Positions 46,501 to 63,280 of a stretch of DNA of 64,000 bases are shown in pieces. The stretch lies in IMG/VR virus record IMGVR_UViG_3300020474_000001, positions 124,001 to 188,000 of that record. One strand, given 5' to 3'. Both the position numbers and the translations under genes were made by a program. How positions within the stretch are numbered: position 1 is the stretch's first letter; every line of letters starts with the position of its first letter. The notes under the pieces were generated by a model, which saw nothing but the letters and a program-made list of their open reading frames with translations, was not told where the DNA came from and made no database searches.

Positions 46501-49500
46501 TCCTTCATAAGATCCAGAAAAACTGCTAACCAATCCATCAATTGCATCCAAGTTAGTTTTGCTCTCATCTGAGATGTTTATCGCAGTCATGAAAACATTT
46601 GCATGAACATCAATATTTTGAATTGGTGTAAAAATTAATTGAGTTTTGTAAGAAGTGTCAAATATTATTCTAGAACTTATTGTCCCAACAGTTTCTCCAT
46701 TAGATATGATTCCATATTGAGTTTGATATGTGTCATATGTTGGTACTTCCTCTTGATAGGTATCAACTAGTATTATTTCGGAAAATTCTACAGTATTATT
46801 TGTAGTATCTGAAATCTGAACTATGAAATATGCCGCATCATATCCATCTGAAGATTGATACTCAGCAATAACTTCTGGTTGTGGAGATGCAGATGCTGCT
46901 ATTGATGTTGTTTTTGATTCTACTCTACCGAACTTCAAATCTGAAAATCCATTATCAGTTGAGCTAAAATCTTTTAATGCAATTACAAGAGAATTGGCAA
47001 CACCAGAATTTATAGTAATATTTTGATTTGGTGTAAAATCTATTTTTATTTTAGAATCTTCAGTATACGCACGATATGTCCCAAATCCAACAGAACTAGT
47101 TACCTGAAGATCTGTTGATATCTTTGTGCTTTCTAAAATATGAATATCTGAACCTATCTTGACGATATTCATTTCAGTAACTTCAAATTCTTGATTTTCG
47201 CTTGGATCTGGATCAATTTCCACAAGAATTTTAAATGAAGTATAGGTGTCATCTATTTCAAAGATGGTAGTTGTTTCTTCTTCTTCAATACTCTCTGTAG
47301 AAGTCGTCAATAATGCTCCACCTATCTCACCAGTACCTGTTGATTGAAGTGTTTCATCTAAATTGAAAGAAACTGCTGTTATATCGTAATTGTTTATCTC
47401 AGTTTTGTTTGGATAAAATAGCAAAAGTCCCCTATCACCGAAAACTGAATAATCAAAAGATCCCAAATCGTATGCGGTTTCAACTCTTGCATATTGATTC
47501 ATATATGCATCGGAACCATCATGCAAAAGGTCTACGACCATCAATTGCCTCTGCTGTGTGAATCTTTTATCTTTTACATATGTTAAATATTTTCCAAATC
47601 TTCTTTCTGAAAATACAAATGGTGCTATCTCACTAAACTCATCTGCTCTTGGATTGCTATTAAATTCTTCAGATATATTGTCAATTTCTAATACTCTATT
47701 TCCAACTGATTCAAAATAATCTCCTAAGATTTTACTATTAAATACTATCTTCGTAGAAGCACCGTCTATATTATTTTCAGATGCCAAATCAAAGTCAAAT
47801 ACAGAATTCAAATTACATTTGCCAATTAAATTATTAATTTGCTCAAATGTTCCTGTAGATAGACCGACAATCATAGAGTTTGGGTTTTCTACAAAAGACT
47901 CCAATTGATAATCTGAGAATTTCTTAAATCCTGTCGTATGTGCTAGAGGAGATACATCATCATTCCAAGTATCATAATCTACTCTTGATCTAACAGAGTA
48001 TGAAAACTTTTGGTAGTAGTCACTATCTTGAATTTTTTGCAGATTATTGTTTAAAAATCCAGATTCCGTTTTCGAGCTTGTTTTAACACTTAAAGAAGAG
48101 TTTAAAGGCAAATATGGACTTATTCTAATAGACTCTGTAACTATCCCTTCAGCTTTGGATGAAATTCCTTTAACTGAAGATCCAACCTCATAATCATCAC
48201 TTGATGATATGTGCATAACACCAGTTTCCGAGTCCCAATACTCAATAGTTCCAGAGTGATCTTTTCCTCTTATATTTTCATGTAATTTATAGGTTTCTTT
48301 TGTTAAAAAATCACTTTTCCTAAGTGTAGTTGAAAATACTGGAAAATATGACTCTGGTATTAATTTTCCAAAAGATCTAGTATCATCAAATTGTCCAATA
48401 GTATCGCCAATTTCTATAAGATCGGATATATTGTATGTTACTGATCCGTATAAACTAGATCCAATATTTTCTACTGTAGATATTGCTTCAAATAAAGTAT
48501 AATTGTAATCTTTGGAATTGAATCCACGTCCAGAAGTTTTATTGATTACATTTTCTATTAAAAATCTATCTCCAACTTTTACTGGAAAAGATTCGGTGTC
48601 ACTATACTGAACATTTAAAGAAACTGTAACATCATTAGTTGCTTCATTATATGATATTGTACTAATTCCGACTCCATTGCTATTTTGGGTGGGAATTATT
48701 ATTGGTTCAGAATTGCTAAGTCTGGTTGTATTTTTTAATACCTCTATAGAAGAATTTTCCAAGTCATAATTTAAATCTAAGTCATCAATAACTTCATTTC
48801 TGGTGGAATCTTTAACGATCAACTTAGGGGCAACTAAATAAGGTTTTCCATTTGATGAAATTGATATTGAGTCGATAGTGTATAGTGGATCAACCTTTAA
48901 TATTTGAGTTAAACATGCAGTTGGTCTAAGAGTCTCGTCAGAAGGATAACTTTTCTTTACACTTGAAATCCTTACACTATTAACTTTTCCTATAGAATTA
49001 CTTAATGGTTCTAAAACAGCATTTTCACCAAGCTGACTATCTATTGATGAAATTTTAGGAAGTTTTCTATAATTTTTCCCTTTGTTAGATACAAAAATTT
49101 TAGAAATTGGTCCAGAAGCTGTTAATGACGTTGTCGCATAGTTTATATCAGAAATATCTGGATCATAACTTTCACTTTCTACAATTTTTTTAGTATTAAA
49201 TTTAAATGATTTTTCTGACAATACCTCTATATTATAAACTCCATTATAATTACTATCCTTAACAATTATCGAAGAAGAATCTAATAATTCGTCGTCTACA
49301 AAAAGTTCAAGTTTGGATTCTGGAGGAATATTCTCAATTATTGGGTCAAGTCTATAATATAAAAATTTAGGTGTTTCATCGCTTATTGACAATGTCACTT
49401 TGGCATCAGAATCTATTCCTGGTCTTCCTACTCTATTTGCATTCAAAATAGATTCTTGCCAAATCATTTCATAATCCCTATCAAGATAGAAATTCAGTTC

Positions 49501-52500
49501 AAATGCAGAATATCTTACAGATTGTCTTAAATATGAAAGAGATGGATCTGACATATCAAATATTAATGTAGAATCTTTGTAAATACTTAATTTTGGATTT
49601 ACAGATCCAATCTCGCCAGAAGAAGATGTTAAAATACTTACGATTTTGTGAGATAGTGAATTGTTGTAAGTATCTGATAATTTTATAGTATCACTATCAA
49701 CAAATACTACATAATAAATCTGGTTATTCAACAATCCATCAGAAGGATTTGATGAAGTGTATATGATCTTATCCCCTGTGAATAATCCATGATTTGAAAT
49801 TGTAATCGAACTCATCTGAGTGTCTACATCTCCTTGATCGAATGACTTTTTATCTAAGATCATTCTTCTAGTATCATCATTATATGAAATAATATGTGTA
49901 AATGATTCTTTTGGATTTACAGAAAGAACAATCCCATCTTCTGCTGATAACTCGTGATTTTCTACAGTATTAATATAGATTTCATTTTTTGAGATATTTC
50001 CGATCAAATTATCATATGTTGTCTCAAAACTGTGGTAAATCCCAGTCCCAACATCATTGAAAAATAGCGTTCTAGACGCTTCAGAATCGCTTGTAATGCC
50101 CACAAAAGAACCTTCAGATCCTATCCCTACCTTAACGGTAGATATGCCGATTAGATCCTCAGAAATTCTAGCAACATAGAGATTTTGGTTGTTGCTTAAA
50201 GTAAATCCAATACCGACATTTTCTTCTGATACGATAATACCTGTACCAGAATTTATTTTATACTTAACTAGATCTCCAGTTCTTAATCCATGATCTTTAA
50301 GATATATTGATTTAGTTGGGATATACAAAGAACCATCATCAGTGCTAATCGTCGTGCCGATTCCAATACCAGAAATAGTTCCAATTCCAATCGATTGAAC
50401 TGGATTGAAATATATTTCTTTATTCTGCTGGCTTATATAATTTTCCTTAGATTTGATTTTTAATCTTCTGGGAATTTCAGATAATCTGGAAAATATTGTA
50501 TGGGAATCTCCAGATGTCCCATCAAATTCTCTTAAGACCCTAATATAAGATTGAGTCTTATTGATATTCAATACCTTTACTTTTTCCGAGTCAATTTGGT
50601 AAATATCATTTTCTTTCACTTCAGATAATGCATTGTTTCCCAATACTTTAAAGATTGTGACAATACCAGTCTGACCAGAATCTTGAATAGATTCAGATAT
50701 TCTTAAATTTATTGGATTTACACTTGCAATATATGTTCCTTCAAGATTAAAATTTGAAGAAATTCCAGAAATATTAATTATATCATTATTTCCCAAATCA
50801 TGTGGTGTATTGGAAGTTATGAGGTATGTATCTTTTTGATTTAAAGATGATACTTCAACATTATCGGATTGAACTGTTTCAAATCTTATGGATTCTACAG
50901 ATTTTCCTTTAACATGAGAAACTCTTCCTGATGCATTTGATCCACCACTATCAACATCATTAAATAATACTCTATCATTAACCTTATAATAGTCTCCAGG
51001 ATTTTTTACAATAATAGAATCGAGTTCTCCCGGTTTAATAGATTCTATTACCAGTCTTTGTGAATTATCACTTGGTACATCAAGATAATCGTAATTCTTT
51101 CCAGAATTACTTAAATTGTACGGTTTTGTATTTCTAGCCCAACTCTTATTAAAATTGAAATGGTTCTGATTTGAATTTCTTTCGAAGTTGAATTTTATTG
51201 GACTACTTTGATAGAAGTTTCCAATCAAATATGGGAATTCTGGTTTTTTGTATTTAATAAATGGTCCAGAAGATTCTACCGTAGTTGGATTTAGTGTTGC
51301 AAAGTAGGCATAAGTCCCATTTGGGAAATCTGGAGTTATACAAAATCTTCCATTATTTGGATCTAGAATATCTTCGCTACTTGAGTTTACATAATCATAG
51401 TCTTCTACAAAAAATCCTTCTGGAAATATAGATGTTGGTGGTCTCCCCTGTTTTATATTCAGTTTATATCCAGATTTCATTTGAGTGATACTACCTCTAC
51501 CATCTTTTTTGGAATATGCATATGGTCCATAAATTGGATTGCCATCATATGCCCAACCAATGATTGGAGAGTGATTTATTGAAGATACTTCAATATTATT
51601 TGATTTCCTTAAATCTTTTTTCCCATATAATTTTTCTCCGTTAGAATCTATAGAATGTATAGTCTCCCTCAGACCTCTTGGAGCATATATGTAAGAAGAT
51701 TGCAGACCTTTACTGGAATCAACTCCATTAGAAAGAACAGTATCGTCAAATTCTACATTTGATATATTTTTTTCAAAAAGGTTGACACTCCAGGATTTTA
51801 CTATTGGATTTAAATTTGCATCCTGTCCCGAAGGTTCAATATTTACAAAAGTTTCTTGAGTAAATCCAAATCCACCACTTATTACATTAATATCTCGTAA
51901 AAATCCGTTCTCAATTATAGGAGTTAAAACTGCACCTGTACCATTACCTATAATTATCAAATCTGGTGGAGAGGTATACCCACTACCCTGATTCAATATG
52001 ACTACATCTACAATTTCTCCGTTGTTTACTACTGTTTTTGCTTGAGCATTGACACCAAAGTTAAATTCAACAATTGGATCTCTATTATAATTGATTATCT
52101 CAGAAGATCCATATCCAACACCTCCAGAAGATACATGTACTCCTGAAATTTCTCCTCTGAAAATAGGTTGAACAACAACTTCAAATGTTTCTCCACCAAT
52201 AGAAGAAATACCAACTTTACTTATGATGTCTACTCTAATTTTTTGGTAATTAAATATGCTAATGCCACTGCCTTTTGAACTCAGATTTACATACTTTCCT
52301 TCAATGTAGTTTTTCTGTTCATCATCACTTTCACTAACTTCAGATAACTTAAACTCGTCATCATTTAACTTTTTCACGTAATATTCTTTACTTAATTCCA
52401 ATCCACCAATAGTACTTCCAGTTGATGAAACATATTCTACTATTTCCCCAGATTCATATCCATGATTTTGGAGGGTAATGCATTTTTTCTGTAAATTTAC

Positions 52501-55290
52501 ATTATTTTCTCTTATTGCTCTTCTCTTATTTTGGTAATTTTGACCCGAATTAAGAATATTGAAAGATTCGACTGTAAATTTCTTCTCTATAGATTCGATA
52601 ATGTGATCACCAACACCCAATGCAGTTAAATTTACTGGATTTGAACCTGAAATAGAGTCATCTCTTGTATTGTATAGAGAAATTGTATATTCATCTTTGG
52701 ATTCCACAAAATAATTTGAACCATTAGATAATCCACCGACAGACTGCTGGTCATTTGTTATATAAACAACTTGTTCTCCTGTTTTAAATTTGTGATATCC
52801 GGAGAATATAATTTTATTGTCTGTAGTTGAAATTCCCACAGAATTGAATTTTTCAAAATGTCTAGATCTCACCATATTTGGAGATACTAATGCCCCAGAA
52901 CCATTTCCACCAGTAATTGTTACGATTGGTGATTCTTGGTAATCAAATCCAGGATTTATAATTCTAAGCTCACTTAAAGATCCTGATACATCTAAAAGTG
53001 CTTCAGCACCAGTTCCAAATTTATCAGAAATTGTCAAATCTGGCGGATTTATAACATCAAAGTCAAATCCAGGAGAAAGTACGTCAATTTTCTCAATTTC
53101 TCCAAATTTTATACAATCAAAAGATTTGTAATTTAAAATTTCTACACCATTTATCATTATTCCAGTAAAACCTGGACTTGTTTCCACTTTTTTTGAAATT
53201 TTTTCTGGATTTTTTAATTTTCTAAGTAAATTTTGGTTATCTAAAGACTTTTCTCTTAATTCATATGGTTCAAGTGTATTATTATTAACAATTTTATCAG
53301 AATCTAAAGAAATAAATATAGAATTTTCAATATTTGAGAGACTGAGTGCAAATTTTACTTCAGTTGAAGAAATTCTTTTGATAAAATATTGCCCAGGATC
53401 AAATAAAGATGATAATGTTCTCTCAACAACAGTAAATCCATCTAAAGATGCATCAGAATCTTCAATTCTTTGCACTTCTACCTCTGGTTTATAGAAAACT
53501 GAGTCTCCAGTGTAAAATCCATGATCATTTATGTCTGAAATTGCGAAAATTTCTTCTCCTTCTTGAAAATTTCCAGAAAAATACAATTTTCTCTCGGCAT
53601 TTTCTCTTAAATTTGAAGGAATTGATGATGATGCTATCAAATATTCCTCTTCTTCATTATGTTTGTATAAATTTTGAACATTTGTGATATAATTATCATC
53701 ATATTTAAGAATATTTCTCTTAATTTTTACATAATTTGCATCTAGTGAGGAATTGCAGCGTACTGAAATCACTTTTTCTGATATAATATCAGTTATTTTG
53801 CCCGAAACAATTTCTTGAGATGTGGAAATTACCTCAAATTGGTCATTCACTATGAAATCGTGAGAATTTTTTAGAATTATTTGGTAACTATTATCAAACT
53901 CAGCAATTAAATCAATATTTTTAATATCAAACGATGGAGAAGTGTTGTAAATCCAGTTATCATTCTTAAAATCTTCTTCATAATATCCCAAGTGCTTGAA
54001 TTTGACTGAAAGATTTTTATGATAACCATAGGTATCATCAGGAAATTCTACTTTTTCTGGTATTGAGTGAATTCTTACCTTAATAGTATCGTCACCAGAC
54101 TTTGCATATGCAAATGTATTGATACTAACTGGAGTCGCATCTAAAATTTTTGATGAAACATTTCTACAACCAAAGAATTGATTGAGAGATTTCATCTTAT
54201 AAGACACCACACCGTTACTTAAATTGTCATAAGTTACATATATCTCACCCTTTTCTGGGAAACCTATAGTAGAATCTACAGTAATTGTTGTTGCGCCACT
54301 CTCTATATTGCCAATAACTCTTGTTTGTGGATGTACTTTAAAGTCTCCATAGATAGAACTCTTTAAACCACTATCTCTGTTAGAACCAAGACCAGAGTCT
54401 AACTTTGCTTTATAATATATTTCTCCAGTATTTGAGTCATCTATTTTTTCAACACCTGTAATTGGTGCAAATGCTTCTCCTATTATATCTTTGTATGGAT
54501 CTTGACATAGTGTAGATAGGCTTAGCTTATCGGGATTTCCAGAAATAACTTCCAAAATTATTTCATCGAATGTCTCATAGTTGGAATTTGATGGGGTAAG
54601 GAGAAAATCTTTAGGAGTTAGGATTTCAACTTTCTCTCCATATAATAGTTTGAATAGTAATTCAAATCCAACTTCAGTTCCTTTTGATGAATAAAAATCT
54701 CTACTATTTTGAATAAAGATATTTTCATCAACTGAGTAGTCAAATTTTTTATTTTCTAGTCCAGGTAAAAGCTGATGTTTTAATTTAAGTAATAGTTCTT
54801 TTAAAAATAATGAACTGAGATTATGAATAGTTGCACCGGATGCATGCTTACTGATATTTGTAGATTCAAATGTAAGATCTCCCATCTTATCTTGATCTCT
54901 GTATCCAGAAATACCACTAAATCCTCTCACACATCCAGTAAACGAGAAACGAGTTTTTCCCGTATATGTGATAATTTCATCATCTATCTTGAGAAGTCCA
55001 TAGGCATCTGGAAATCCATTTGTTCCAGTATAGGAAGTGGATGGATTGATTCTTATCGTTCTGTCACCAAACCCAATATCTCCCTGTAAAATTGCAGATT
55101 CTGTGCAATTGGTCAGTTCGTCTAACTTTACATACTTGTCTATGTTCTGAATTAAATCATATGGACCACCAGGATACTCTTGACCAGTGTAATACTGCTG
55201 CAAGAACTCTTCAAAAAGAGGATATTCTTCACGAACATATGTTGGAATCTGGCTCTTTAAAACCTGACTGATTTTAATTCTTTGAGACAT
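43540..55290 (-). CDS. g7: Baseplate wedge initiator gp7-like giant protein
   Basis: QIPTYVREEYPLFEEFL, FYSSKGT, IIGWAYDGNPIYGP, FPNGTYAYF, IQDSDYYQKFSY; between g6 and g8. Confidence 0.85.
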   Translation of the reverse strand: MSQRIKISQVLKSQIPTYVREEYPLFEEFLQQYYTGQEYPGGPYDLIQNIDKYVKLDELTNCTESAILQGDIGFGDRTIRINPSTSYTGTNGFPDAYGLLKIDDEIITYTGKTRFSFTGCVRGFSGISGYRDQDKMGDLTFESTNISKHASGATIHNLSSLFLKELLLKLKHQLLPGLENKKFDYSVDENIFIQNSRDFYSSKGTEVGFELLFKLLYGEKVEILTPKDFLLTPSNSNYETFDEIILEVISGNPDKLSLSTLCQDPYKDIIGEAFAPITGVEKIDDSNTGEIYYKAKLDSGLGSNRDSGLKSSIYGDFKVHPQTRVIGNIESGATTITVDSTIGFPEKGEIYVTYDNLSNGVVSYKMKSLNQFFGCRNVSSKILDATPVSINTFAYAKSGDDTIKVRIHSIPEKVEFPDDTYGYHKNLSVKFKHLGYYEEDFKNDNWIYNTSPSFDIKNIDLIAEFDNSYQIILKNSHDFIVNDQFEVISTSQEIVSGKITDIISEKVISVRCNSSLDANYVKIKRNILKYDDNYITNVQNLYKHNEEEEYLIASSSIPSNLRENAERKLYFSGNFQEGEEIFAISDINDHGFYTGDSVFYKPEVEVQRIEDSDASLDGFTVVERTLSSLFDPGQYFIKRISSTEVKFALSLSNIENSIFISLDSDKIVNNNTLEPYELREKSLDNQNLLRKLKNPEKISKKVETSPGFTGIMINGVEILNYKSFDCIKFGEIEKIDVLSPGFDFDVINPPDLTISDKFGTGAEALLDVSGSLSELRIINPGFDYQESPIVTITGGNGSGALVSPNMVRSRHFEKFNSVGISTTDNKIIFSGYHKFKTGEQVVYITNDQQSVGGLSNGSNYFVESKDEYTISLYNTRDDSISGSNPVNLTALGVGDHIIESIEKKFTVESFNILNSGQNYQNKRRAIRENNVNLQKKCITLQNHGYESGEIVEYVSSTGSTIGGLELSKEYYVKKLNDDEFKLSEVSESDDEQKNYIEGKYVNLSSKGSGISIFNYQKIRVDIISKVGISSIGGETFEVVVQPIFRGEISGVHVSSGGVGYGSSEIINYNRDPIVEFNFGVNAQAKTVVNNGEIVDVVILNQGSGYTSPPDLIIIGNGTGAVLTPIIENGFLRDINVISGGFGFTQETFVNIEPSGQDANLNPIVKSWSVNLFEKNISNVEFDDTVLSNGVDSSKGLQSSYIYAPRGLRETIHSIDSNGEKLYGKKDLRKSNNIEVSSINHSPIIGWAYDGNPIYGPYAYSKKDGRGSITQMKSGYKLNIKQGRPPTSIFPEGFFVEDYDYVNSSSEDILDPNNGRFCITPDFPNGTYAYFATLNPTTVESSGPFIKYKKPEFPYLIGNFYQSSPIKFNFERNSNQNHFNFNKSWARNTKPYNLSNSGKNYDYLDVPSDNSQRLVIESIKPGELDSIIVKNPGDYYKVNDRVLFNDVDSGGSNASGRVSHVKGKSVESIRFETVQSDNVEVSSLNQKDTYLITSNTPHDLGNNDIINISGISSNFNLEGTYIASVNPINLRISESIQDSGQTGIVTIFKVLGNNALSEVKENDIYQIDSEKVKVLNINKTQSYIRVLREFDGTSGDSHTIFSRLSEIPRRLKIKSKENYISQQNKEIYFNPVQSIGIGTISGIGIGTTISTDDGSLYIPTKSIYLKDHGLRTGDLVKYKINSGTGIIVSEENVGIGFTLSNNQNLYVARISEDLIGISTVKVGIGSEGSFVGITSDSEASRTLFFNDVGTGIYHSFETTYDNLIGNISKNEIYINTVENHELSAEDGIVLSVNPKESFTHIISYNDDTRRMILDKKSFDQGDVDTQMSSITISNHGLFTGDKIIYTSSNPSDGLLNNQIYYVVFVDSDTIKLSDTYNNSLSHKIVSILTSSSGEIGSVNPKLSIYKDSTLIFDMSDPSLSYLRQSVRYSAFELNFYLDRDYEMIWQESILNANRVGRPGIDSDAKVTLSISDETPKFLYYRLDPIIENIPPESKLELFVDDELLDSSSIIVKDSNYNGVYNIEVLSEKSFKFNTKKIVESESYDPDISDINYATTSLTASGPISKIFVSNKGKNYRKLPKISSIDSQLGENAVLEPLSNSIGKVNSVRISSVKKSYPSDETLRPTACLTQILKVDPLYTIDSISISSNGKPYLVAPKLIVKDSTRNEVIDDLDLNYDLENSSIEVLKNTTRLSNSEPIIIPTQNSNGVGISTISYNEATNDVTVSLNVQYSDTESFPVKVGDRFLIENVINKTSGRGFNSKDYNYTLFEAISTVENIGSSLYGSVTYNISDLIEIGDTIGQFDDTRSFGKLIPESYFPVFSTTLRKSDFLTKETYKLHENIRGKDHSGTIEYWDSETGVMHISSSDDYEVGSSVKGISSKAEGIVTESIRISPYLPLNSSLSVKTSSKTESGFLNNNLQKIQDSDYYQKFSYSVRSRVDYDTWNDDVSPLAHTTGFKKFSDYQLESFVENPNSMIVGLSTGTFEQINNLIGKCNLNSVFDFDLASENNIDGASTKIVFNSKILGDYFESVGNRVLEIDNISEEFNSNPRADEFSEIAPFVFSERRFGKYLTYVKDKRFTQQRQLMVVDLLHDGSDAYMNQYARVETAYDLGSFDYSVFGDRGLLLFYPNKTEINNYDITAVSFNLDETLQSTGTGEIGGALLTTSTESIEEEETTTIFEIDDTYTSFKILVEIDPDPSENQEFEVTEMNIVKIGSDIHILESTKISTDLQVTSSVGFGTYRAYTEDSKIKIDFTPNQNITINSGVANSLVIALKDFSSTDNGFSDLKFGRVESKTTSIAASASPQPEVIAEYQSSDGYDAAYFIVQISDTTNNTVEFSEIILVDTYQEEVPTYDTYQTQYGIISNGETVGTISSRIIFDTSYKTQLIFTPIQNIDVHANVFMTAINISDESKTNLDAIDGLVSSFSGSYEGTHADIKKSFDMTNGGSPIFENIFSGEDSSVVDVSNHSINLQNHFFVTGESLTYNSNASGESNSVFESIEIEPTDFVGIGVTNRLPSSVFAIKVTNNVIKLASTPENALKGTPEFIRFANVGIGSDHKLTSNNQNSKVLVTIDNVIQSPIFSTTLNKTSVRDILITDDKVLVNDVSGLFGGELIQINDEVMLVDSIGVGTTNAIRVRRSQLGTGIYSHTSGADIRKVGGNYNIVDNKINFAEAPYGRVPIGSPTNDPEDRDWTGISTSSNFNGRVFLRSGIPNTSEETYNKNYVFDDISHQFNTINNQFTLKHDSSNVSDIPNPILLINDIFQYPDSVNYSLDQNLGISTITFDDSGDNTISIPRGGSIISVGSSQGFGYQPLVTAGGSAGIASDGTIESISVGNTGSGYRSGIQTVNVSVYNDFNDIEVVGSANVLDGHVTDYVVTNPGSGYTSTTPPKIIVDAPLSYNNIPLVYSSTSSGSGIGTGAVADIIVGNDSKVIDFTLTNSGYGYEIGEVLTLPSGSSVGIPTTTGFQEFIITVDRTVTDKFSAWSLGELVLLDNIEKFIDGTRKIFPLTKSNISQSIISGEGSSVDVQNVLIVFVNNILQIPGEGYIFSGGSLITFTEPLELGDTVEILFYRGSGNIDVIKRNIIETVKRGDEIQIINDPSVGQNSHLKEDTRIAESVESTNIINTNAYFGPGNVSNEDLLRPVIWTKQTEDKIINDQEVGKDRELYEPSINPVSYLINPVGVGQTIIYADTLRPAFDNVSENDKDTSFQNEITLLSQTEVKTENCKVEQYSGDFGVVVGFAVTTDPHNRMIFDLQIPDDSIMRDESLVGTAVTVSQLSSGDYFTISSSLITPESSLVPLISYDTNFNIVGMTTSFIDSTFFVEDAEIISRNIDGVQTTLKRVSCRINRFDSTTAPTVYSGDLVSSGYLGSFSWGKIILKERTKQNTYDPSSLNGYVGISSSTVIRRSIPLQYINYLQ

Positions 55291-57235: not shown

Positions 57236-57643
57236 TTATCTAGTTGGCTGTAAAACAAATTCTAACTGCTGGATTTGTGAATTAATATCAATCCCAATGA
57301 TTTCATATACAATTGATACATTAAATTCACCATTGTCATAATCTGAACCTACATCAACTTCGATTAATTTCACTCTTGGTTCATAATTTATAATGGAATT
57401 CTCAATTTTATCTTTGAGGATGTTTGCACTAAAGGTATCTATGTTCTCAAACAATGATGCGGTAACATCCGTACCAAAATCATAGTCAAAAAATTTCTCA
57501 CCAAATTGGGTATACACAATATTCCGAACACTTCGGGCAATTGCAGTCTCATTCTTTACTGGAAATATATCATCAGTTAATGGGTTCTTCTTAAATGATA
57601 AACTAATATCCTTAAACCCCTTACTGACCCTTTCTAGTGGCAT
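57236..57643 (-). CDS. g25: Baseplate wedge subunit gp25
   Basis: FKDISLSF, AIARSVRNIV, NYEPRV. Confidence 0.93.
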   Translation of the reverse strand: MPLERVSKGFKDISLSFKKNPLTDDIFPVKNETAIARSVRNIVYTQFGEKFFDYDFGTDVTASLFENIDTFSANILKDKIENSIINYEPRVKLIEVDVGSDYDNGEFNVSIVYEIIGIDINSQIQQLEFVLQPTR

Positions 57644-57933: not shown

Positions 57934-58074
57934 TTAACCTTTCCCTTGTCCTCGATAACGCTTTCGAGCTTTGTTACGTGAACTGGCAGCATACTTTGTA
58001 TGTTTCCCAGCACCTTGTCTTGTGTTCTTGGGAGTTGGTACAATTAAATCGCCAGTCTTACTTCGCATTGCCAT
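57934..58074 (-). CDS. 46-aa highly basic hypothetical protein (not in ORF track)
   Basis: Manual translation MAMRSKTGDLIVPTPKNTRQGAGKHTKYAASSRNKARKRYRGQGKG with GAGG RBS. Confidence 0.7.
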   Translation of the reverse strand: MAMRSKTGDLIVPTPKNTRQGAGKHTKYAASSRNKARKRYRGQGKG

Positions 58075-58085
58075 AATTCTTTACC

Positions 58086-58865
58086 TCAAATAATACGAGT
58101 CTTTTCATGTCCGACACGAATGCGTGGATCACAGAGAATACTAAAACCAGCTTTCTTTGCATCTAAACAAAAACTGACATCCTCGCCACACATGTCCTGC
58201 ACTTCACCACTCTCAAATACTTGCATCTTAGGTGCAAACCATGGATATGGTAATCCCTTATCCTCAAATACTCCCTTCCGAATTAACATCCACCCAAATC
58301 CTGCATAATCTACAGTGAATGGTTCGGTACGACCACTTAGACTTGTTAATGTCTCGTGATTCATTACCCCACCGTTATCCTTGAATCCATTCTCATCCAT
58401 CCAATGTGCAACACTCGATGACTTGCCATCTTCTGTACAATACCATCCAGTCGTAATTGCATTCTTCTTTCCTTCCTCAGGTTCTGCTAATGCACATAAC
58501 TGCCAGAATTTCTCCGTGTTGAATACAATATCACTATCAATCCATAATTGATAATCATACTCTAACTTACCGTCCCATGGCTCTTGGTCGGGTCCCCTCA
58601 ATACATTGGCACCCAAACATTTGCAACGGGCGAAATTTACCATTGAACTGTAATCTTGACTAATCTGTATAGCCATTCCATTCTGTACTAAGTCAAAACA
58701 TAATTGCACAAAATTTTTGAGAAATGTATACGATACTCCCCTGCCTGGAAGGCAAAATACAATCGTCTTCCCTCTCATACTCTCTTTGATACTCTCGTAA
58801 TCCCACTCAGGCTCTGATACACTCACAGCAGCGGCATCCTCCTTGATACTGAATCCTTTAGACAT
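58086..58865 (-). CDS. GT-A fold glycosyltransferase-like protein
   Basis: DxD motif WIDSDIVF, AGFGWMLI, CGEDVSFC, RVGHEK. Confidence 0.7.
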   Translation of the reverse strand: MSKGFSIKEDAAAVSVSEPEWDYESIKESMRGKTIVFCLPGRGVSYTFLKNFVQLCFDLVQNGMAIQISQDYSSMVNFARCKCLGANVLRGPDQEPWDGKLEYDYQLWIDSDIVFNTEKFWQLCALAEPEEGKKNAITTGWYCTEDGKSSSVAHWMDENGFKDNGGVMNHETLTSLSGRTEPFTVDYAGFGWMLIRKGVFEDKGLPYPWFAPKMQVFESGEVQDMCGEDVSFCLDAKKAGFSILCDPRIRVGHEKTRII

Positions 58866-58888
58866 AATCTTTCAATGACTACTCCGTA

Positions 58889-58917
58889 ATTATAACAAAT
58901 TTATATATACCTGTCAA
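58889..58917 (-). promoter_or_regulatory. Consensus sigma70 promoter
   Basis: TTGACA-17nt-TATAAT on the minus strand upstream of the GT-like gene. Confidence 0.85.
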
Positions 58918-59111
58918 TATTGTTACCCTTGACCACCCTTTTATATCCCACGGATTTTTTTCTGAAACCTTATACAAAAACCCTTTTTGGGTGGCAAAAA
59001 TTTTTGGCGTTTTTTTATATACATCGCGTTTTGTCACCTCTGTAGGTTAGGGATGTTTGCTTTTTTTAATACGCGCAAATATAAACAATTAACAATAAAT
59101 CGTAATTACTG

Positions 59112-59239
59112 TGTATTACTAATAGATAGTGATTTGCTATGTATTACTAATAGATAGTGATTTGTTATTTGATAATTAGCAGATTACTATTTGATAATTA
59201 AGCGATTGCTATGTAATAAGAATAGATAGCAATCGCTTA
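59112..59239. repeat. AT-rich direct repeats and a perfect inverted repeat
   Basis: 25-bp TGTATTACTAATAGATAGTGATTTG at 59112 and 59140; TATTTGATAATTA twice; 14-bp IR 59199-59212 / 59226-59239. Confidence 0.9.
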
Positions 59240-59267
59240 TATATTACTATATTGTGGATAGTCAATA

Positions 59268-59510
59268 TTAATAGTCTGCCCATTCTGCTAGCATTTCATT
59301 CAATCGCGCAACGTCCAAATCAGCATGCTTCCAATACACACCATCAGGAGTAACTGCACCGTAAAGTTCAACTAATTGGTGCGAGAGTGACTTATAACCG
59401 TGCTCCGCAAACATACGAGCAAGGTTATACATTCCCTCATCATTACCCAACCAGAGAGCAACATTCCAGGTTTCGTAGTTTGCCCAACCGTTGCAAGTTT
59501 GAGTGCTCAT
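59268..59510 (-). CDS. Putative early hypothetical protein (NGWANYETW motif)
   Basis: CNGWANYETWNVALWLGNDEGMY...TPDGV motif typical of small phage early proteins. Confidence 0.8.
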   Translation of the reverse strand: MSTQTCNGWANYETWNVALWLGNDEGMYNLARMFAEHGYKSLSHQLVELYGAVTPDGVYWKHADLDVARLNEMLAEWADY

Positions 59511-59547
59511 AATTCAGGGGGAAGATGTAAAGAATGGGGAGCGTTGC

Positions 59548-59739
59548 CTAGTCAAGGAGAACAGCAGCGTGATCGTTAGCGAAGCGGCGAGCGTTACAGG
59601 CAGCGATCTGCCATGCGGGACGCCCTGCTGAGGGTTCAGGGAACGCTGCGGAAATGGCAGCATCGACGCCCTGGTGGATGGAGCGTTCAACCCATACGTG
59701 GGAACGATCAGAGAGGGAGCAAGCGGGAGAGAAGGGCAT
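59548..59739 (-). CDS. Small GC-rich putative early hypothetical protein
   Basis: ORF track; same strand and spacing as neighbours; pyrimidine-rich leader. Confidence 0.45.
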   Translation of the reverse strand: MPFSPACSLSDRSHVWVERSIHQGVDAAISAAFPEPSAGRPAWQIAACNARRFANDHAAVLLD

Positions 59740-59797
59740 TGGAAGAACGGGGGGAGAGATACATGGGGGCGACGATGCCCCCGCTGTGTTGTGGTGC

Positions 59798-60016
59798 TTA
59801 GGGGAACATCAAGTCGGTAAAGCGCTCGGAGTGCCATGCCCGCAACTCGCCTAGGTCGATTCGCTCGCCCATCAGGCGTCCGTAGTCGATGGCGAACTGC
59901 TGTAGAAGGCAAAGTTCAGGATTAACAGGGTCCCAGACATAGCGAACTGCCTCTGGAAAGGAGATGGTGCCATTGGCATCAGCGGTGGGCATTGGTTTCG
60001 TTTGAACTAAACCCAT
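59798..60016 (-). CDS. Small putative early hypothetical protein
   Basis: Preceded by the palindrome/leader cassette at 60017-60070. Confidence 0.55.
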   Translation of the reverse strand: MGLVQTKPMPTADANGTISFPEAVRYVWDPVNPELCLLQQFAIDYGRLMGERIDLGELRAWHSERFTDLMFP

Positions 60017-60132
60017 AATCGCCGAGATCTCAGGAGAAATCTATAGGCACTGTGCCAGTTTGCCAACTGGTTTTGACTGGTTTTGAAATGTTAAGAGTTG
60101 TGAAATATTCGCGATTCTGCCTCTCGGTGCGC

Positions 60133-60218
60133 TACACTATGGGAGACAACCAAAGGAGGGGTGAGGTAGCCCTGATGACGCCAACGGTCGCCACTCCCCC
60201 TGCAATCAATTAAGTATA
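60133..60218 (+). other. Repeated element copy 1 between convergent -10 boxes; contains 12-codon ORF 60175-60213 (MTPTVATPPAIN)
   Basis: TACACT(+) ... GAGGTAGCCCTGATGACG...CGCCACTCCCCCTGC ... TATACT(-). Confidence 0.7.
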
Positions 60219-60270
60219 TCATTTTGTTACAAAATCCCTGTCAATGGGTTGTGTGCCACTATGGCGGGTG

Positions 60271-61011
60271 TCACACCCCGGCATGCTGTTGCTTATATGG
60301 TTTCAAAAATGCGGCGTTAAGTTTTACTTTAGCGTTAAGATTCGACTCCTTTGACTGACCGCCGTGCAGCAACAGTGCAAAGGGACCATCCATGAAACAG
60401 CGTTCTTCGTGGCGGTACTCGACACCGTCAATTGGCAGATTCAGTTCTGCCGCTTCTGCAATATCCTGCACGACCTTTACATAGCGAGGGAACCTGCCAG
60501 CATCAATTAATGCATCATATCTGCCGCCATAAGATGCTGTCATATAGAAATTATCAGGCAAAATAACACTGCGGAACAAGTGCAACGACTTAGAGTAGCA
60601 ATAGAATTTAAGACCTGGCATTCTCTTGGCGACCTTAATCCATGCTTTTAAATACTCAATATTGAAAAAATCACCAGACTCATGTATACGAATGCGAGTA
60701 TACTTACGGCGGCGCTTCTTTAACTCTACCTGAATCGATTGATAGATTAACTCCTCAATATTGTCACTAGCATTAATTAAATCAAAATTATGCTTTCGTG
60801 CATCATAAACTGCAGGATATTGTGCTTCAGCACGGGCAGCGAAACAAGTGAATTCAGTGTTATCACCACGCACTAGATTGCGCTTGCCGCTGTTAACAAC
60901 TGCCCATGCCCTACACTTATCAGCACCGGGACAGGTTCTACCCGCAGGCAGGTTGAAAATCAAGGTGTCGGGGTGCAGTTTAGCGTTGCCAGCGGAGAAC
61001 TTAAGAAGCAT
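60271..61011 (-). CDS. GP88-like (radical-SAM-related, Cys-containing) phage protein
   Basis: FSAGNAKL, FNLPAGRTCPGADKC...CFAA, RIRIHESGDFF, FYCYSKS; start MLLK at 61011. Confidence 0.75.
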   Translation of the reverse strand: MLLKFSAGNAKLHPDTLIFNLPAGRTCPGADKCRAWAVVNSGKRNLVRGDNTEFTCFAARAEAQYPAVYDARKHNFDLINASDNIEELIYQSIQVELKKRRRKYTRIRIHESGDFFNIEYLKAWIKVAKRMPGLKFYCYSKSLHLFRSVILPDNFYMTASYGGRYDALIDAGRFPRYVKVVQDIAEAAELNLPIDGVEYRHEERCFMDGPFALLLHGGQSKESNLNAKVKLNAAFLKPYKQQHAGV

Positions 61012-61150
61012 GGATCTGAGGTCGATTGATACCAGTATTGCCGGGATTCGCATGCATGCTGGGGTCATTGTGCCACTATGCCAACTGGTTTGAAACGTTA
61101 CAAGATGTTAAAGGTTCGTGAATCTGCCGCACTTCCCCCATCCGATACGC

Positions 61151-61235
61151 TATGATGTGGGAACAACAGAAGGAGGGGCAGGGCAGCCCTGATGACGAAA
61201 AAAGGCGACACTCACCCTGCAACGAAATAATCATA
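61151..61235 (+). other. Repeated element copy 2; contains 12-codon ORF 61192-61230 (MTKKGDTHPATK)
   Basis: TATGAT(+) ... GGGCAGCCCTGATGACG...CGACACTCACCCTGC ... TATGAT(-). Confidence 0.7.
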
Positions 61236-61291
61236 AGATATGTGACACTTTATGAACTGTCACAGTGCCACTTTTATATGTGGTTTTATTA

Positions 61292-61358
61292 CATAATTGT
61301 ATTTTATGGCAGGGTAAGTGGCGATCGTTGTCGTCTTCGGTGCTACCTCACACCTCAA
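61292..61358 (-). other. Repeated element copy 4 (inverted; AAG in place of ATG, no in-register stop)
   Basis: Minus strand reads GAGGTGTGAGGTAGCACCGAAGACGACAACGATCGCCACTTACCCTGCCATAAAA. Confidence 0.65.
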
Positions 61359-61489
61359 TAAATTGTAACAATCAGAGCATAATGGTGTTTCCCAACTGAT
61401 CGTATCTTAGCACAGCAGGAGCAGATCCGTGACCCACTCCGTAACATAATGAAATATTATCACTTTGCCAGCATAGAGTTTGAGTGATA

Positions 61490-61714
61490 TTATTCTTCCT
61501 CCTCCTCTACTTTTACGACCTTGAGTTTACCTGCGGCAATAAGATCCAACAGCATACCAGTCGATCCCTTCAAAATACCGTCTCCGTCAATACGCAGACA
61601 CTGAAATTCTTTGGCAATGTCATCTACAATGTCCGGCGTTATTTCCCCACAACGGATGGCATATACTCGTCTTGTATGCTCGTCGTTGATGTCAAGACCC
61701 AAATAGTTTCTCAT
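61490..61714 (-). CDS. Putative early hypothetical protein
   Basis: ORF track; plausible composition; acidic tail. Confidence 0.6.
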   Translation of the reverse strand: MRNYLGLDINDEHTRRVYAIRCGEITPDIVDDIAKEFQCLRIDGDGILKGSTGMLLDLIAAGKLKVVKVEEEEE

Positions 61715-61765
61715 GATGATGAAGATGAAGATGATGTTAGCGAAGGTGATGATTGTGAAGGTGAT

Positions 61766-62002
61766 TCAATACTGTGGATCAATGAACATAACAGTGCAGG
61801 ATCCACGCGGACGAAGAATAATGGTTTCGCCACATTCTTCTCGGTCACATTTCACTCCAGATAATCCTATTGCTTCCTTACATGCTAGGACAATCTGTCG
61901 ATCAGTGGCACAATCTGAGAGACTAATTGTCTCCCGATCACACCAACTGTAGTTTGCTTCACCACCGAATGTGTCAGTGTACTCAACCTTAAAGTTCTGC
62001 AT
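61766..62002 (-). CDS. Putative early hypothetical protein (YTDTFGGEANYSW motif)
   Basis: VEYTDTFGGEANYSWC...AIGLSGVKC...LRPRGSCTVMFI. Confidence 0.8.
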   Translation of the reverse strand: MQNFKVEYTDTFGGEANYSWCDRETISLSDCATDRQIVLACKEAIGLSGVKCDREECGETIILRPRGSCTVMFIDPQY

Positions 62003-62040
62003 GATTCAAAAAAAGAATAAAGTTTGCGGGTAAAATCTTA

Positions 62041-62304
62041 TCAGGTGTGAGTGCTACCATCAGGTAACATGCAACCGTGAAGACCACAATTTGGCAAAAT
62101 ACCTTCGATGATGACACTGTAGGTGCCATTATGATGGTTTCCTTGCACATCTTCCTCCACCATTAACCCCTGCATAAGTTCAACAACACTCTTGCCTGTT
62201 TGTATGCTCCACATAGAAAACTTTGCGAGTTGCTGATAAGTCAGAACCTGGAAGTGATCACCCAGGGTTCCATCAGATTCGAGAAGTGGTGCTCTGTAAC
62301 GCAT
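62041..62304 (-). CDS. Putative early hypothetical protein
   Basis: ORF track; preceded by palindromic sites at 62340-62385. Confidence 0.65.
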   Translation of the reverse strand: MRYRAPLLESDGTLGDHFQVLTYQQLAKFSMWSIQTGKSVVELMQGLMVEEDVQGNHHNGTYSVIIEGILPNCGLHGCMLPDGSTHT

Positions 62305-62393
62305 TTGGTTGGTTGCGATTGATATAAGTATGGGTCAGAGTGGACAACTTATCAACCTCAGAGTGACAGTTTGCCAAGTGTCCACTAATGTTA

Positions 62394-62759
62394 TCAAGCG
62401 ATTGCCCTTTCTATCATTTTAATAATAAGTTCACTTGGCGCTACAATATCATTAACTACGCTTTCTTCCCCCGTTGCTTCTAAGGGAACACAAGTTAAGT
62501 GCATCTTCCAATCATATTTTCTATTGTTGAAGAACAACATAGAATAATCTACAGCATCGACAATATCAGCACCGATAACAGCAAGGGATTTTGTATTCTT
62601 TTCTTTGCTAACTTTCCATTCTTTGACAGGTTCCATACCTTCGCCGTCGAGAACATCAAACGCAACAAGATTCCAACCTGCATCATCAAGTTTGCGAATA
62701 ATCTTCCGGGCGTTGCTGCATGTCTTGGAGATTGCCATGGGGTTGATGTAACTGAACAT
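62394..62759 (-). CDS. Putative early hypothetical protein
   Basis: ORF track; preceded by the leader cassette and a palindrome at 62762-62819. Confidence 0.65.
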   Translation of the reverse strand: MFSYINPMAISKTCSNARKIIRKLDDAGWNLVAFDVLDGEGMEPVKEWKVSKEKNTKSLAVIGADIVDAVDYSMLFFNNRKYDWKMHLTCVPLEATGEESVVNDIVAPSELIIKMIERAIA

Positions 62760-62848
62760 ATAATCATCGAGATCTCAGGACCAATCAATACCAGCTGTGA
62801 CAGTTCACCAAGTGTCCACCGATGCCCTCAGAGGCACCTAGGAGGCGC

Positions 62849-62932
62849 TATAATATAAACAAATCAGAAGAGAGGTGGGGTAACCTCGATGACAACAAAT
62901 ATCGACACTACTCCTGCCATAAAATAATTATA
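62849..62932 (+). other. Repeated element copy 3; contains 12-codon ORF 62889-62927 (MTTNIDTTPAIK)
   Basis: TATAAT(+) ... GGGGTAACCTCGATGACA...CGACACTACTCCTGCC ... TATAAT(-). Confidence 0.7.
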
Positions 62933-62947
62933 TCAAAATGTAACAAT

Positions 62948-63136
62948 GTGCCAGTTTGCCAAGTGTCACAGTGCCAGTTCATAAACTGTCCACTCGGTCC
63001 TACTGCCTCCCTCCCGTGCTCCACCCTTCCACTGTAGGGGCTGCTGCCCGCTGCTGCTGTATAAACCACTACGATTTTATAAATTGTCACAAAGACACAT
63101 AAAGCACTGGCACTGGACAGTTCTCGAAGTGTCCAC
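62948..63136. promoter_or_regulatory. Cluster of palindromic operator-like sites
   Basis: GTGCCAGTT-tgcc-AAGTGTCAC (62948), GTGCCAGTT-cata-AACTGTCCAC (62971), TGGACAGTT-ctcg-AAGTGTCCAC (63114). Confidence 0.75.
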
Positions 63137-63179
63137 TGTGTGAAAATCGCGACCTTATGAATTTTTATGGCGGGGGTGC

Positions 63180-63208
63180 TTGACAAAACGGCGATCGTGT
63201 GATAACAT
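63180..63208 (+). promoter_or_regulatory. Sigma70-type promoter with no obvious downstream ORF
   Basis: TTGACA-17nt-TAACAT. Confidence 0.6.
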
Positions 63209-63240
63209 GCTGCCCAAGATCACAAGGTCTCAGAGGGTTT

Positions 63241-63280
63241 CATAAGACTTTACATAAGACTTTACATAAGACTTTACATA
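63241..63280. repeat. 12-bp tandem repeat CATAAGACTTTA x3 plus a partial unit
   Basis: Units at 63241, 63253, 63265, partial at 63277. Confidence 0.95.

What the first reader, a model, noticed from the sequence alone, without database searches (positions are those of the whole stretch)
61165..61420. Fourth, inverted copy faces copy 2 across a palindromic operator
Seen in sequence: the minus strand at 61300-61358 reads GAGGTGTGAGGTAGCACCGAAGACGACAACGATCGCCACTTACCCTGCCATAAAA. This is the same element, with AAG for ATG and TAC for TAA. It points towards copy 2, with a near-perfect palindrome GTGACACTT-tatg-AACTGTCAC (61242-61263) between them. It has its own upstream TGC-TAAGAT -10 box and a two-codon ORF (ATG CTC TGA). 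A partial fifth copy (TTTTATGGCGGGGG...GGCGATCGT) overlaps the promoter at 63164-63200. Inference: loss of the ATG argues either for a non-coding function or for a decayed copy. The head-to-head layout could form a long hairpin, a cruciform or a recombination hotspot.
Basis: partly seen in the sequence, partly recalled or inferred. Interest (0 to 1): 0.6.

Follow-up and report, generated by a model that had tools for sequence, protein, structure and literature searches.

The report
Convergent small-RNA cassettes in a cyanophage
The inverted "fourth copy" is real: it and copy 2 are two convergent members of a large, apparently undescribed family of promoter-driven, hairpin-bearing non-coding RNA elements in T4-like cyanophages, and the palindrome between them belongs to a second repeated DNA motif that normally sits at a fixed distance upstream of such promoters.

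Summary
The minus strand at 61297-61372 is a fourth copy of the element: covariance model 84 bits, E about 1e-17. It converges on copy 2 (61163-61235, plus strand), so their 3' ends face each other across a 24-bp quasi-palindrome at 61241-64.

The element is not a 12-codon gene. Among 155 distinct copies from about 170 viral contigs, only 55 have ATG at that place and 37 keep a 12-codon frame. One subfamily carries a 1-nt indel that breaks the frame.

The conserved features are:
- a -10 box (TAnnnT) with an A six bases downstream;
- a 5-bp hairpin with strong compensatory change (99.8% paired; G-U pairs fix the strand);
- an unpaired GAC...UCGNCAC stretch;
- a tail that comes in two forms.

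Rfam has no match, sampled cyanobacteria have none, and one cultured phage (DSL-LC03) has one copy.

The arms of the palindrome vary independently, and it has no T-run beside it. In 69% of oriented instances it lies 31-33 nt upstream of a -10 box. I therefore read it as a protein-binding promoter element, not a terminator hairpin. This particular instance has no such promoter, and one relative has deleted it.

Relatives and an independent metagenome keep the same orientation, so no inversion is seen. Transcription is inferred, not shown.

The parts
61151..61156 (+). -10 box (TATGAT) of copy 2
   Evidence: Read. 154 of 155 family members have a TAnnnT-type box at this position.
61163..61235 (+). 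Copy 2 of the RNA element. Hairpin P1 pairs 61175-61179 with 61186-61190.
   Evidence: Model match 83.7 bits. P1 covariation.
61241..61264 (.). 24-bp quasi-palindrome (TGTGACACTT-TATG-AACTGTCACA). It is a member of the motif family TGTGMCASTT-N4-AASTGKCACA, here in minus-strand orientation.
   Evidence: Deleted in relative L027. No TAnnnT box at the canonical 31-33 nt on either side (read).
61267..61291 (+). Small hairpin (CCAC...GTGG) followed by a T-run. It is terminator-like for copy 2.
   Evidence: Terminator scan. RNA fold of 61236-61296: -13.8 kcal/mol, z -1.9.
61297..61372 (-). Copy 4 of the RNA element, the one in the finding. P1 pairs 61350-61354 with 61339-61343. AAG stands at the place of ATG.
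   Evidence: Model match 84.2 bits, E about 1e-17. Orthologous copies are present in L008, L023 and L027.
61377..61382 (-). TATGCT, the -10-like box of copy 4 at the family position.
   Evidence: Alignment of the family upstream regions. Identical in L008 and L027.
61404..61412 (-). It is a possible alternative promoter 22 nt further upstream.
   Evidence: Read. Conserved in L008; TAGGAT in L027. Not tested.
60133..60218 (+). Copy 1 with its -10 box (TACACT, 60133-60138). The RNA runs from about 60146.
   Evidence: 86.7 bits.
62797..62932 (+). Copy 3 cassette: 24-bp motif (62797-62820), -10 TATAAT (62849-62854), RNA from about 62861.
   Evidence: 91.1 bits. The motif-to-box spacing matches the family.
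62362..62387 (+). 24-bp motif copy. It is one of the two direct repeats that flank the ORF 62394-62759, which is missing in L008/L023.
62948..62995 (+). Two adjacent motif copies downstream of copy 3. They are homologous to the 3' flank of copy 4.
   Evidence: (I6, D19).
63113..63136 (+). A further motif copy.
63164..63200 (-). Possible truncated remnant of an inverted copy (tail word plus GGCGATCG only).
   Evidence: Read. The model does not detect it.

Best explanation
The locus holds two convergent genes of one family of small non-coding RNAs. This family is carried, often in several copies, in the variable gene regions of T4-like cyanophages (Kyanoviridae). Each unit has four parts: a host-type -10 box; a start at a conserved A; a leader ending in GAGG that runs into a 5-bp hairpin with a G-rich loop; and then an unpaired conserved stretch with a variable C-rich or G-rich tail and an A/U-rich end. 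Most units point against the flanking protein genes. They sit between the end of one gene and the start of the next, so together with the 24-bp motif they form repeated regulatory cassettes. Genes are swapped between these cassettes in related phages. The 24-bp quasi-palindrome is most likely the binding site of a dimeric DNA-binding protein centred about 53 bp upstream of the transcription start. The copy between copies 2 and 4 has no promoter at that distance and can be lost, so it is probably a leftover of the cassette that brought in copy 4, or at most a roadblock between the two converging units. SHOWN: family membership, hairpin covariation and its strand, lack of a conserved reading frame, promoter-box conservation, motif statistics and spacing, conserved orientation in relatives, and gene replacement between conserved cassettes. 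INFERRED: that the units are transcribed, that the RNA acts as a regulator (I favour an early, trans- or cis-antisense-acting RNA read through its unpaired tail), and that a protein binds the motif.
For: Family size: nhmmer gives 223 hits in 173 loci and 155 distinct cores. The model gives 131 hits at E<=1e-5 in 100 sources. Hairpin: 99.8% of 650 cells are paired, with 105 double changes against 20.6 in shuffles; partners slid by 1-3 columns give 43-69%. Pair 22-33 reads GC 89, UA 42, AU 11, CG 6. Pair 20-35 is G-U in 122 of 155, which would be a mismatch on the other strand. No ORF: ATG in 55/155, TAG in 26, no ATG/GTG/TTG in 90. Orthologous copies read ATG, CTG or TAG. Promoter: 154/155 have a TAnnnT-type box, with A in 132/139 six bases after it. 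Orientation: about three quarters lie opposite to both neighbouring ORFs. Motif: 194 hits in 1.66 Mb against 0 in a shuffle. The inner variable pair is G/G or C/C in 84 of 139 and the outer pair is complementary in only 64 of 139. T-runs beside it occur in 3 and 2 of 91. A TAnnnT box starts 31-33 nt downstream in 66 of 96 instances. Seven sites are clustered in 3.2 kb of a 208-kb genome. Cassettes are conserved at 77-85% identity while the genes between them are replaced or missing in L008. Orientation and copy number are the same in L008, L023 and L027. A contig from another study spans 61134-62629 unchanged.
Against: There is no direct evidence of transcription. Three metatranscriptome runs from the source samples gave no contig on the region, although contigs cannot show absence. 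Only one helix is supported; three candidate second helices and two tail pairings fail. The tail does not pair preferentially with its own flanks. No shared mRNA target stands out in the phage genome. No DNA-binding protein was found among the neighbours. The motif at 61241-64 lacks the promoter partner that defines most of its family. Part of the apparent sequence conservation reflects the search patterns used to collect the family.
Confidence: 0.6

Rival explanations
1. The element is a family of 12-codon micro-genes (SD, ATG, MTxx[VI][AD]TxPA.., TAA), and copy 4 is a dead copy that lost its start and stop.
For: Copies 1-3 and several relatives have GAGG, ATG and a stop at codon 13. 37 of 155 distinct copies keep a 12-codon frame.
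Against: ATG is present in only 55 of 155 copies, and a stop codon (TAG) occupies that place in 26. Orthologous copies in close relatives switch between ATG, CTG and TAG. Subfamily B has a 1-nt deletion that shifts the frame yet keeps the nucleotide motif. Copy 4 and its orthologues score as well as the copies with ATG. Selection is visible on base pairing, not on codons.
Confidence: 0.05
2. The palindrome at 61241-64, with the neighbouring small hairpin, is simply a bidirectional intrinsic terminator shared by the two converging RNA genes.
For: It lies exactly between the two 3' ends. Many relatives have a GC-rich hairpin with an A-run before it and T's after it at the same place. The hairpin at 61267-84 is followed by a T-run. 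The two-hairpin fold gives z -1.9 and -2.7. In two cyanobacterial genomes the same motif is followed by a T-run after a gene end.
Against: Family-wide, the motif's arms do not keep complementarity. T-runs beside it are rare, 3 and 2 of 91. Other window instances fold no better than shuffles, z -0.45 and +0.55. Most instances sit at a fixed distance upstream of a -10 box. L027 has lost it.
Confidence: 0.2
3. The inverted pair is a DNA-level switch or hotspot: a cruciform, or an inversion of the segment between or including the copies.
For: The two units are inverted repeats about 60 nt long. Single-stranded DNA of 61160-61360 folds to -31.4 kcal/mol against -19.5 +/- 3.2 for shuffles.
Against: The arms are only 39/59 identical. 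The same order and orientation are seen in L008, L023, L027 and an independent metagenome contig, with no joints. The favourable fold follows trivially from the inverted repeat.
Confidence: 0.05
4. The unit works at the DNA level: a promoter whose short transcript primes replication through an R-loop, as at the phage T4 origins oriF and oriG (recalled from the T4 literature), or a pure recombination cassette with no RNA function.
For: A conserved promoter is followed about 60 nt later by an A/T-rich stretch. There are several copies in the variable regions. Gene swaps are bounded by the cassettes.
Against: The hairpin keeps G-U pairs on one strand, and there is a 30-nt conserved unpaired stretch that a primer or a mere homology patch would not need. 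No origin data are available.
Confidence: 0.1

Closest known systems
PeSL cassettes (promoter-early stem-loop motifs) of T4-like phages (PMC2839356, PMC4122927)
   Same: Both are repeated composite intergenic motifs in the variable regions of T4-like genomes. Both combine a palindrome or stem-loop with a host-type promoter. Both sit at the borders of genes that are inserted, deleted or replaced between close relatives.
   Different: Here the best-conserved promoter points against the genes and drives a conserved, structured transcribed segment of about 60 nt. The palindrome is conserved in sequence but not in complementarity, and it sits about 31 nt upstream of the -10 box rather than acting as a terminator stem. 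PeSLs were not described with an embedded RNA.
Short bacterial regulatory RNAs with an unpaired C-rich seed, such as the UCCC motif of the S. aureus Rsa RNAs (PMC2790875) and cyanobacterial Yfr1 (recalled from memory, not tested)
   Same: Both have their own promoter, are about 100 nt or shorter, carry a hairpin plus a conserved unpaired C-rich stretch that could pair with G-rich ribosome-binding sites, and have no conserved ORF.
   Different: There is no Rfam match. The element was not found in 151 sampled cyanobacterial genomes. It is multi-copy in phage. A quarter of the copies carry a G-rich tail instead. No target was identified.
Known cyanophage RNA motifs (CfrI, PhotoRC-II, wcaG, manA, glnA; listed in PMC9964418)
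   Same: These are non-coding RNA elements carried by T4-like cyanophages.
   Different: None matches. Scans against 4227 Rfam families of the window region and of six relatives' loci gave nothing at the element. Those motifs are cis leaders of protein genes, whereas this unit mostly stands alone and antisense.

Membership tests
Small non-coding RNA gene | Own promoter | tested here: met
   TAnnnT-type box in 154/155 copies, with A six bases downstream in 132/139. Copy 4 has TATGCT at 61377-61382. This is sequence evidence only.
Small non-coding RNA gene | Conserved secondary structure with compensatory changes | tested here: met
   One 5-bp helix: 99.8% paired, 105 double changes against 20.6 in shuffles, and slid controls at 43-69%. 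No second helix is supported.
Small non-coding RNA gene | No conserved reading frame | tested here: met
   ATG in 55/155 copies, a 12-codon frame in 37/155, and a frame-shifting indel in subfamily B.
Small non-coding RNA gene | A transcript of defined ends is made | tested here: inconclusive
   Three metatranscriptome runs from the source samples gave no contig on 59900-63400. Contigs cannot show absence, and no raw reads were on hand.
PeSL cassette | Repeated intergenic motif in a variable region of a T4-like phage | tested here: met
   The window holds a gp25-type baseplate gene and Kyanoviridae families beside it. There are four element copies and seven motif copies in 3.2 kb.
PeSL cassette | Terminator stem-loop directly followed by an early promoter that reads into the next gene | tested here: not met
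   The conserved promoter reads opposite to both neighbouring ORFs in about three quarters of cases. The palindrome does not keep pairing and has no T-run.
PeSL cassette | Marks the borders of gene indels or replacements between close relatives | tested here: met
   Window against L008: cassettes are 77-85% identical, the genes between them are unrelated, and one ORF is lost with its junction inside the motif.
Operator / transcription-factor site | Dyad-symmetric sequence conserved as sequence, with half-sites varying independently | tested here: met
   139 distinct instances have invariant TG.CA..T / A..TG.CA cores. The variable positions are not kept complementary.
Operator / transcription-factor site | Fixed position relative to a promoter | tested here: met
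   For the family, a -10 box starts 31-33 nt from the motif in 66/96 instances, and in 35/96 on the other side too. This is NOT met for the instance at 61241-64.
Operator / transcription-factor site | A cognate DNA-binding protein | not testable with these tools
   No DNA-binding family was found among the neighbouring ORFs. The motif also occurs in 21 of 401 sampled cyanobacterial genomes against 0 for the reversed control, so a host protein is possible.
Micro-ORF / leader peptide | Conserved start codon and frame | tested here: not met

The most novel reading that the evidence does not exclude
Kyanoviridae carry a previously undescribed, multi-copy class of early small RNAs. The class is defined by one hairpin plus a conserved single-stranded reader, with two alternative tails. 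It is expressed from a new promoter architecture governed by a 24-bp dyad site centred near -53, a site that cyanobacterial chromosomes also use. Under this reading the RNA reprograms host or phage translation or RNA decay: its GAGG-rich 5' part and C-rich tail resemble a ribosome-binding site and its complement. The cassettes would double as the recombination joints that shuffle accessory genes.
Probability: 0.15. Interest if true: 0.8.

Novelty: new variant of a known kind. Interest (0 to 1): 0.6.

Why it matters
If these units are transcribed, they are an abundant regulatory RNA family of ocean and freshwater cyanophages that current RNA catalogues do not list. They come with a matching promoter element, and together they give the variable regions of these phages a readable grammar: motif, promoter, small RNA, gene. 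That grammar would make three things testable: how cyanophages time accessory-gene expression without the T4 middle-mode factors, who binds the 24-bp site, and how gene cassettes are exchanged. One cultured phage (DSL-LC03) carries a copy, so experiments are possible. For annotation, the result warns against calling the 12-codon frames genes.

Tried and rejected
- Rfam: scans of 57-64 kb and of six relatives' loci found no family at the element.
- Bacterial genomes: exact-pattern hits (10) lack the hairpin and look like chance. The model found nothing in 151 sampled cyanobacteria, though only some candidates per genome were scored.
- Cultured phages: BLAST found only DSL-LC03.
- RNA evidence: three metatranscriptomes gave no contigs.
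- Second helix: three registers between GAC and UCGNCAC, a loop-tail pseudoknot and a 5'-arm/tail pairing were tested. None shows covariation.
- Tail as anti-terminator: the tail pairs with its own downstream region no better than with other copies' regions (-8.97 against -8.81 +/- 0.16). The same holds for its own 5' part.
- Targets: duplex scan against 259 start regions of the phage genome gave a best mean z of -2.65, with nothing shared convincingly.
- Fifth copy: the model does not detect it.
- L015/L017/L024 pattern hits are the start of a real gene without the hairpin. I treated them as chance.
- Hammerhead, preQ1 and tRNA-like readings were considered from memory. I dropped them because the needed core positions vary and Rfam is silent.
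- Flanking-gene clustering gave only Kyanoviridae families of unknown function.
- Genes next to the motif in cyanobacteria have nothing in common.

Full report
SETTING. The window is bases 124001-188000 of a 207,655-bp virus record. It carries a gp25-type baseplate wedge gene at 57236-57643 and, beside the finding, small minus-strand genes of Kyanoviridae-typical families (GP88, DUF7249, phrog_1574). It is therefore a T4-like cyanophage. The stretch 58-62 kb is 43-45% G+C against 30-36% elsewhere. It behaves as a variable region.

THE OBSERVATION. Repeat finding and alignment show three plus-strand copies (60146-60218, 61163-61235, 62860-62932) and one minus-strand copy (61300-61356). A covariance model built from these copies and ten relatives scores the four copies at 84-91 bits, E about 1e-17 to 1e-19. 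It finds no fifth copy in the whole genome. Copy 2 runs left to right and copy 4 right to left, so they converge, with 3' ends at about 61235 and 61297. The proposed partial fifth copy at 63164-63200 is not recognised on either strand with filters off. It shares only the tail word and GGCGATCG.

A LARGE FAMILY. Three degenerate patterns, each fixing a different part of the element, returned 20, more than 119 and 55 viral contigs. A profile search of all fetched loci gave 223 matches in 173 loci, with 155 distinct 90-nt cores. Many loci hold two to four copies that the patterns had not forced. Flanking genes are Kyano_Gp96, DUF6267, DUF7249 and GP88, all of unknown function. Among cultured phages only Synechococcus phage DSL-LC03 has a copy (68.7 bits), in an unannotated gap and opposite to its neighbours. 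Ten exact-pattern hits in bacterial genomes lack the hairpin. The model found nothing in 151 sampled cyanobacterial genomes. Rfam has no match for the window region or for six relatives' loci. The cyanophage RNA motifs listed in PMC9964418 are all Rfam families, so this is none of them.

NOT A PEPTIDE GENE. Copies 1-3 can be read as 12 codons. Family-wide, however, the triplet at the 'start' is ATG in 55 of 155, TAG in 26, CTG in 20 and AAG in 16. Ninety copies have no ATG, GTG or TTG there, and 37 keep a 12-codon frame. Orthologous copies differ: copy 1 is ATG in the window, CTG in L008 and TAG in L027. Copy 2 is ATG in the window but TAG in both relatives. A subfamily has a one-base deletion that shifts the frame yet keeps the ACACU...CCCUGC...AAAUAA nucleotides.

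WHAT IS CONSERVED.
- A -10 box of TAnnnT type is present in 154 of 155 copies, followed six bases later by an A in 132 of 139 and then by CAA.
- A 5-bp helix is present. Pair 22-33 reads GC 89, UA 42, AU 11, CG 6. Pair 24-31 reads CG 90, AU 28, UG 13, UA 13, GU 5, GC 4. Pair 20-35 is G-U in 122 and G-C in 28.
- On the model-fitted alignment of 130 distinct sequences, 99.8% of cells pair, with 105 double changes against 20.6 in shuffles. Partners slid by one to three columns give 43-69%. That alignment leans toward the structure, but an independent MAFFT alignment gives the same picture.
- The G-U pairs would be A-C on the other strand, so the helix belongs to the strand that carries GAGG.
- No other helix passes: three registers for a second stem, a loop-tail pseudoknot and a 5'-arm/tail pairing all lack covariation.
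- The loop (RGGGUA/C), G-NN-GAC, UCG-N-CAC and a U in AAAUAA are near-invariant. Part of this reflects the search patterns.
- The tail comes in two forms, CCCCUGC (about 115) and GGGGCAGC (about 40), with no compensating change in the core. There is no preference for a copy's own flanks.

CONTEXT. About three quarters of the units lie opposite to both neighbouring ORFs. They diverge from the start of one gene and converge on the end of the next. Downstream, many relatives have a GC-rich hairpin flanked by A's and T's. Others, like the window, have the 24-bp motif.

THE PALINDROME. A regex for the motif finds 194 instances in 1.66 Mb of fetched loci and none in a shuffle. In the phage genome, seven sites cluster at window 60.0-63.2 kb. 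Among 139 distinct instances with a 4-nt spacer, the cores TG.CA..T and A..TG.CA are invariant and flanked by TG and CA. The variable positions are not kept complementary: the inner pair is G/G or C/C in 84, G/C in 26 and C/G in 2, and the outer pair is complementary in 64 of 139. As RNA hairpins the window instances are weak (z -0.45, +0.55, -1.35), and T-runs next to the motif are rare. I oriented the motif by its asymmetric inner pair. On the downstream side a TAnnnT box starts 31-33 nt away in 66 of 96 instances. On the other side it starts at 31-32 nt in 35 of 96. The family promoter logo shows the motif's proximal half at -38 to -31 from the -10 box, with no strong -35. The motif is thus centred about 53 bp upstream of the start. 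It looks like the site of a dimeric DNA-binding protein that often serves divergent promoters. It also occurs in 21 of 401 sampled cyanobacterial genomes (8 exact sites), against none for the reversed control. There it lies in unrelated intergenic places, two of them before a T-run.

THIS INSTANCE. The site at 61241-64 is in minus-strand orientation and belongs to the 3' flank of copy 4. That flank is homologous to the flank of copy 3 (I6). No TAnnnT box lies at the canonical distance on either side. In L027 a 48-nt deletion removes the site and the neighbouring hairpin, so that copies 2 and 4 abut. Both L027 copies have also lost the CCCUGC tail and score about 14 bits lower. The small hairpin at 61267-84 with its T-run is a plausible terminator for copy 2.

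REARRANGEMENT. L008/L023 and L027 keep the same four copies in the order plus, plus, minus, plus. A contig from a different study spans 61134-62629 with three base differences and no joint. The DNA fold of 61160-61360 is favourable (z -3.7), as any inverted repeat would be. Between the window and L008 the cassettes align at 77-85% identity, while 59250-60018, 60278-61061 and 61492-61715 have no counterpart. The segment 62386-62806 (a 121-aa ORF) is absent from L008, and the junction falls inside the motif that flanks the ORF on both sides in the window. That is the behaviour described for PeSL cassettes (PMC2839356, PMC4122927). The difference here is that the conserved promoter is antisense and drives a structured RNA.

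FUNCTION. A duplex scan of the four unpaired regions against 259 start regions of the phage genome gave no shared target. I therefore commit only to this: an early small RNA that acts through its conserved unpaired stretch and variable tail. Transcription itself remains to be shown.

Noticed in passing
window 62386-62806: A 121-aa ORF (62394-62759) with one flanking 24-bp motif is absent from relatives L008/L023. The junction lies inside the motif, as expected for recombination between the two direct motif copies.
   Followed up: yes
window 59250-60018, 60278-61061, 61492-61715: Genes between the conserved intergenic cassettes, including the GP88-like gene, have no counterpart in L008. The cassettes themselves stay 77-85% identical, so this is gene replacement between fixed joints.
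   Followed up: partly
cyanobacterial loci L200-L205: The phage's 24-bp motif occurs in 21 of 401 sampled cyanobacterial genomes, against 0 for the reversed control. All hits are in genomes of 3.3-7.8 Mb, not the small ones, in unrelated intergenic places. Two sites lie in near-identical contexts next to a GCGATCGC word and a T-run.
   Followed up: partly
window 58000-62000: This stretch has 43-45% G+C, against 30-36% in the rest of the window. The variable region may have come from a higher-GC source.
   Followed up: no
window 59106-59240: Three 35-nt direct repeats (77-100% identical), plus an inverted partner, lie in the gap upstream of the DUF7249 gene. A weak chance-level microRNA match falls here.
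   Followed up: no
window 63239-63275: A 12-nt unit, CATAAGACTTTA, is repeated about three times in tandem, downstream of a promoter-like TTGACA-17-TAACAT.
   Followed up: no
window 59514-59912 and 59798-60016: Two overlapping minus-strand frames occur in a very GC-rich patch. The 72-aa frame shares its start region and upstream 65 nt with the 121-aa ORF at 62759 (repeat D8). The 132-aa TTG frame looks non-coding.
   Followed up: no
window 34033-41214 and 43540-55290: Two giant minus-strand ORFs of 2393 and 3916 aa lie next to the baseplate genes.
   Followed up: no
L027:7886-8065: In this relative the two converging copies abut after a 48-nt deletion. Both have mutated tails (CUCUGAC, GAUGCUGC), which may be decay after loss of the spacer.
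   Followed up: partly
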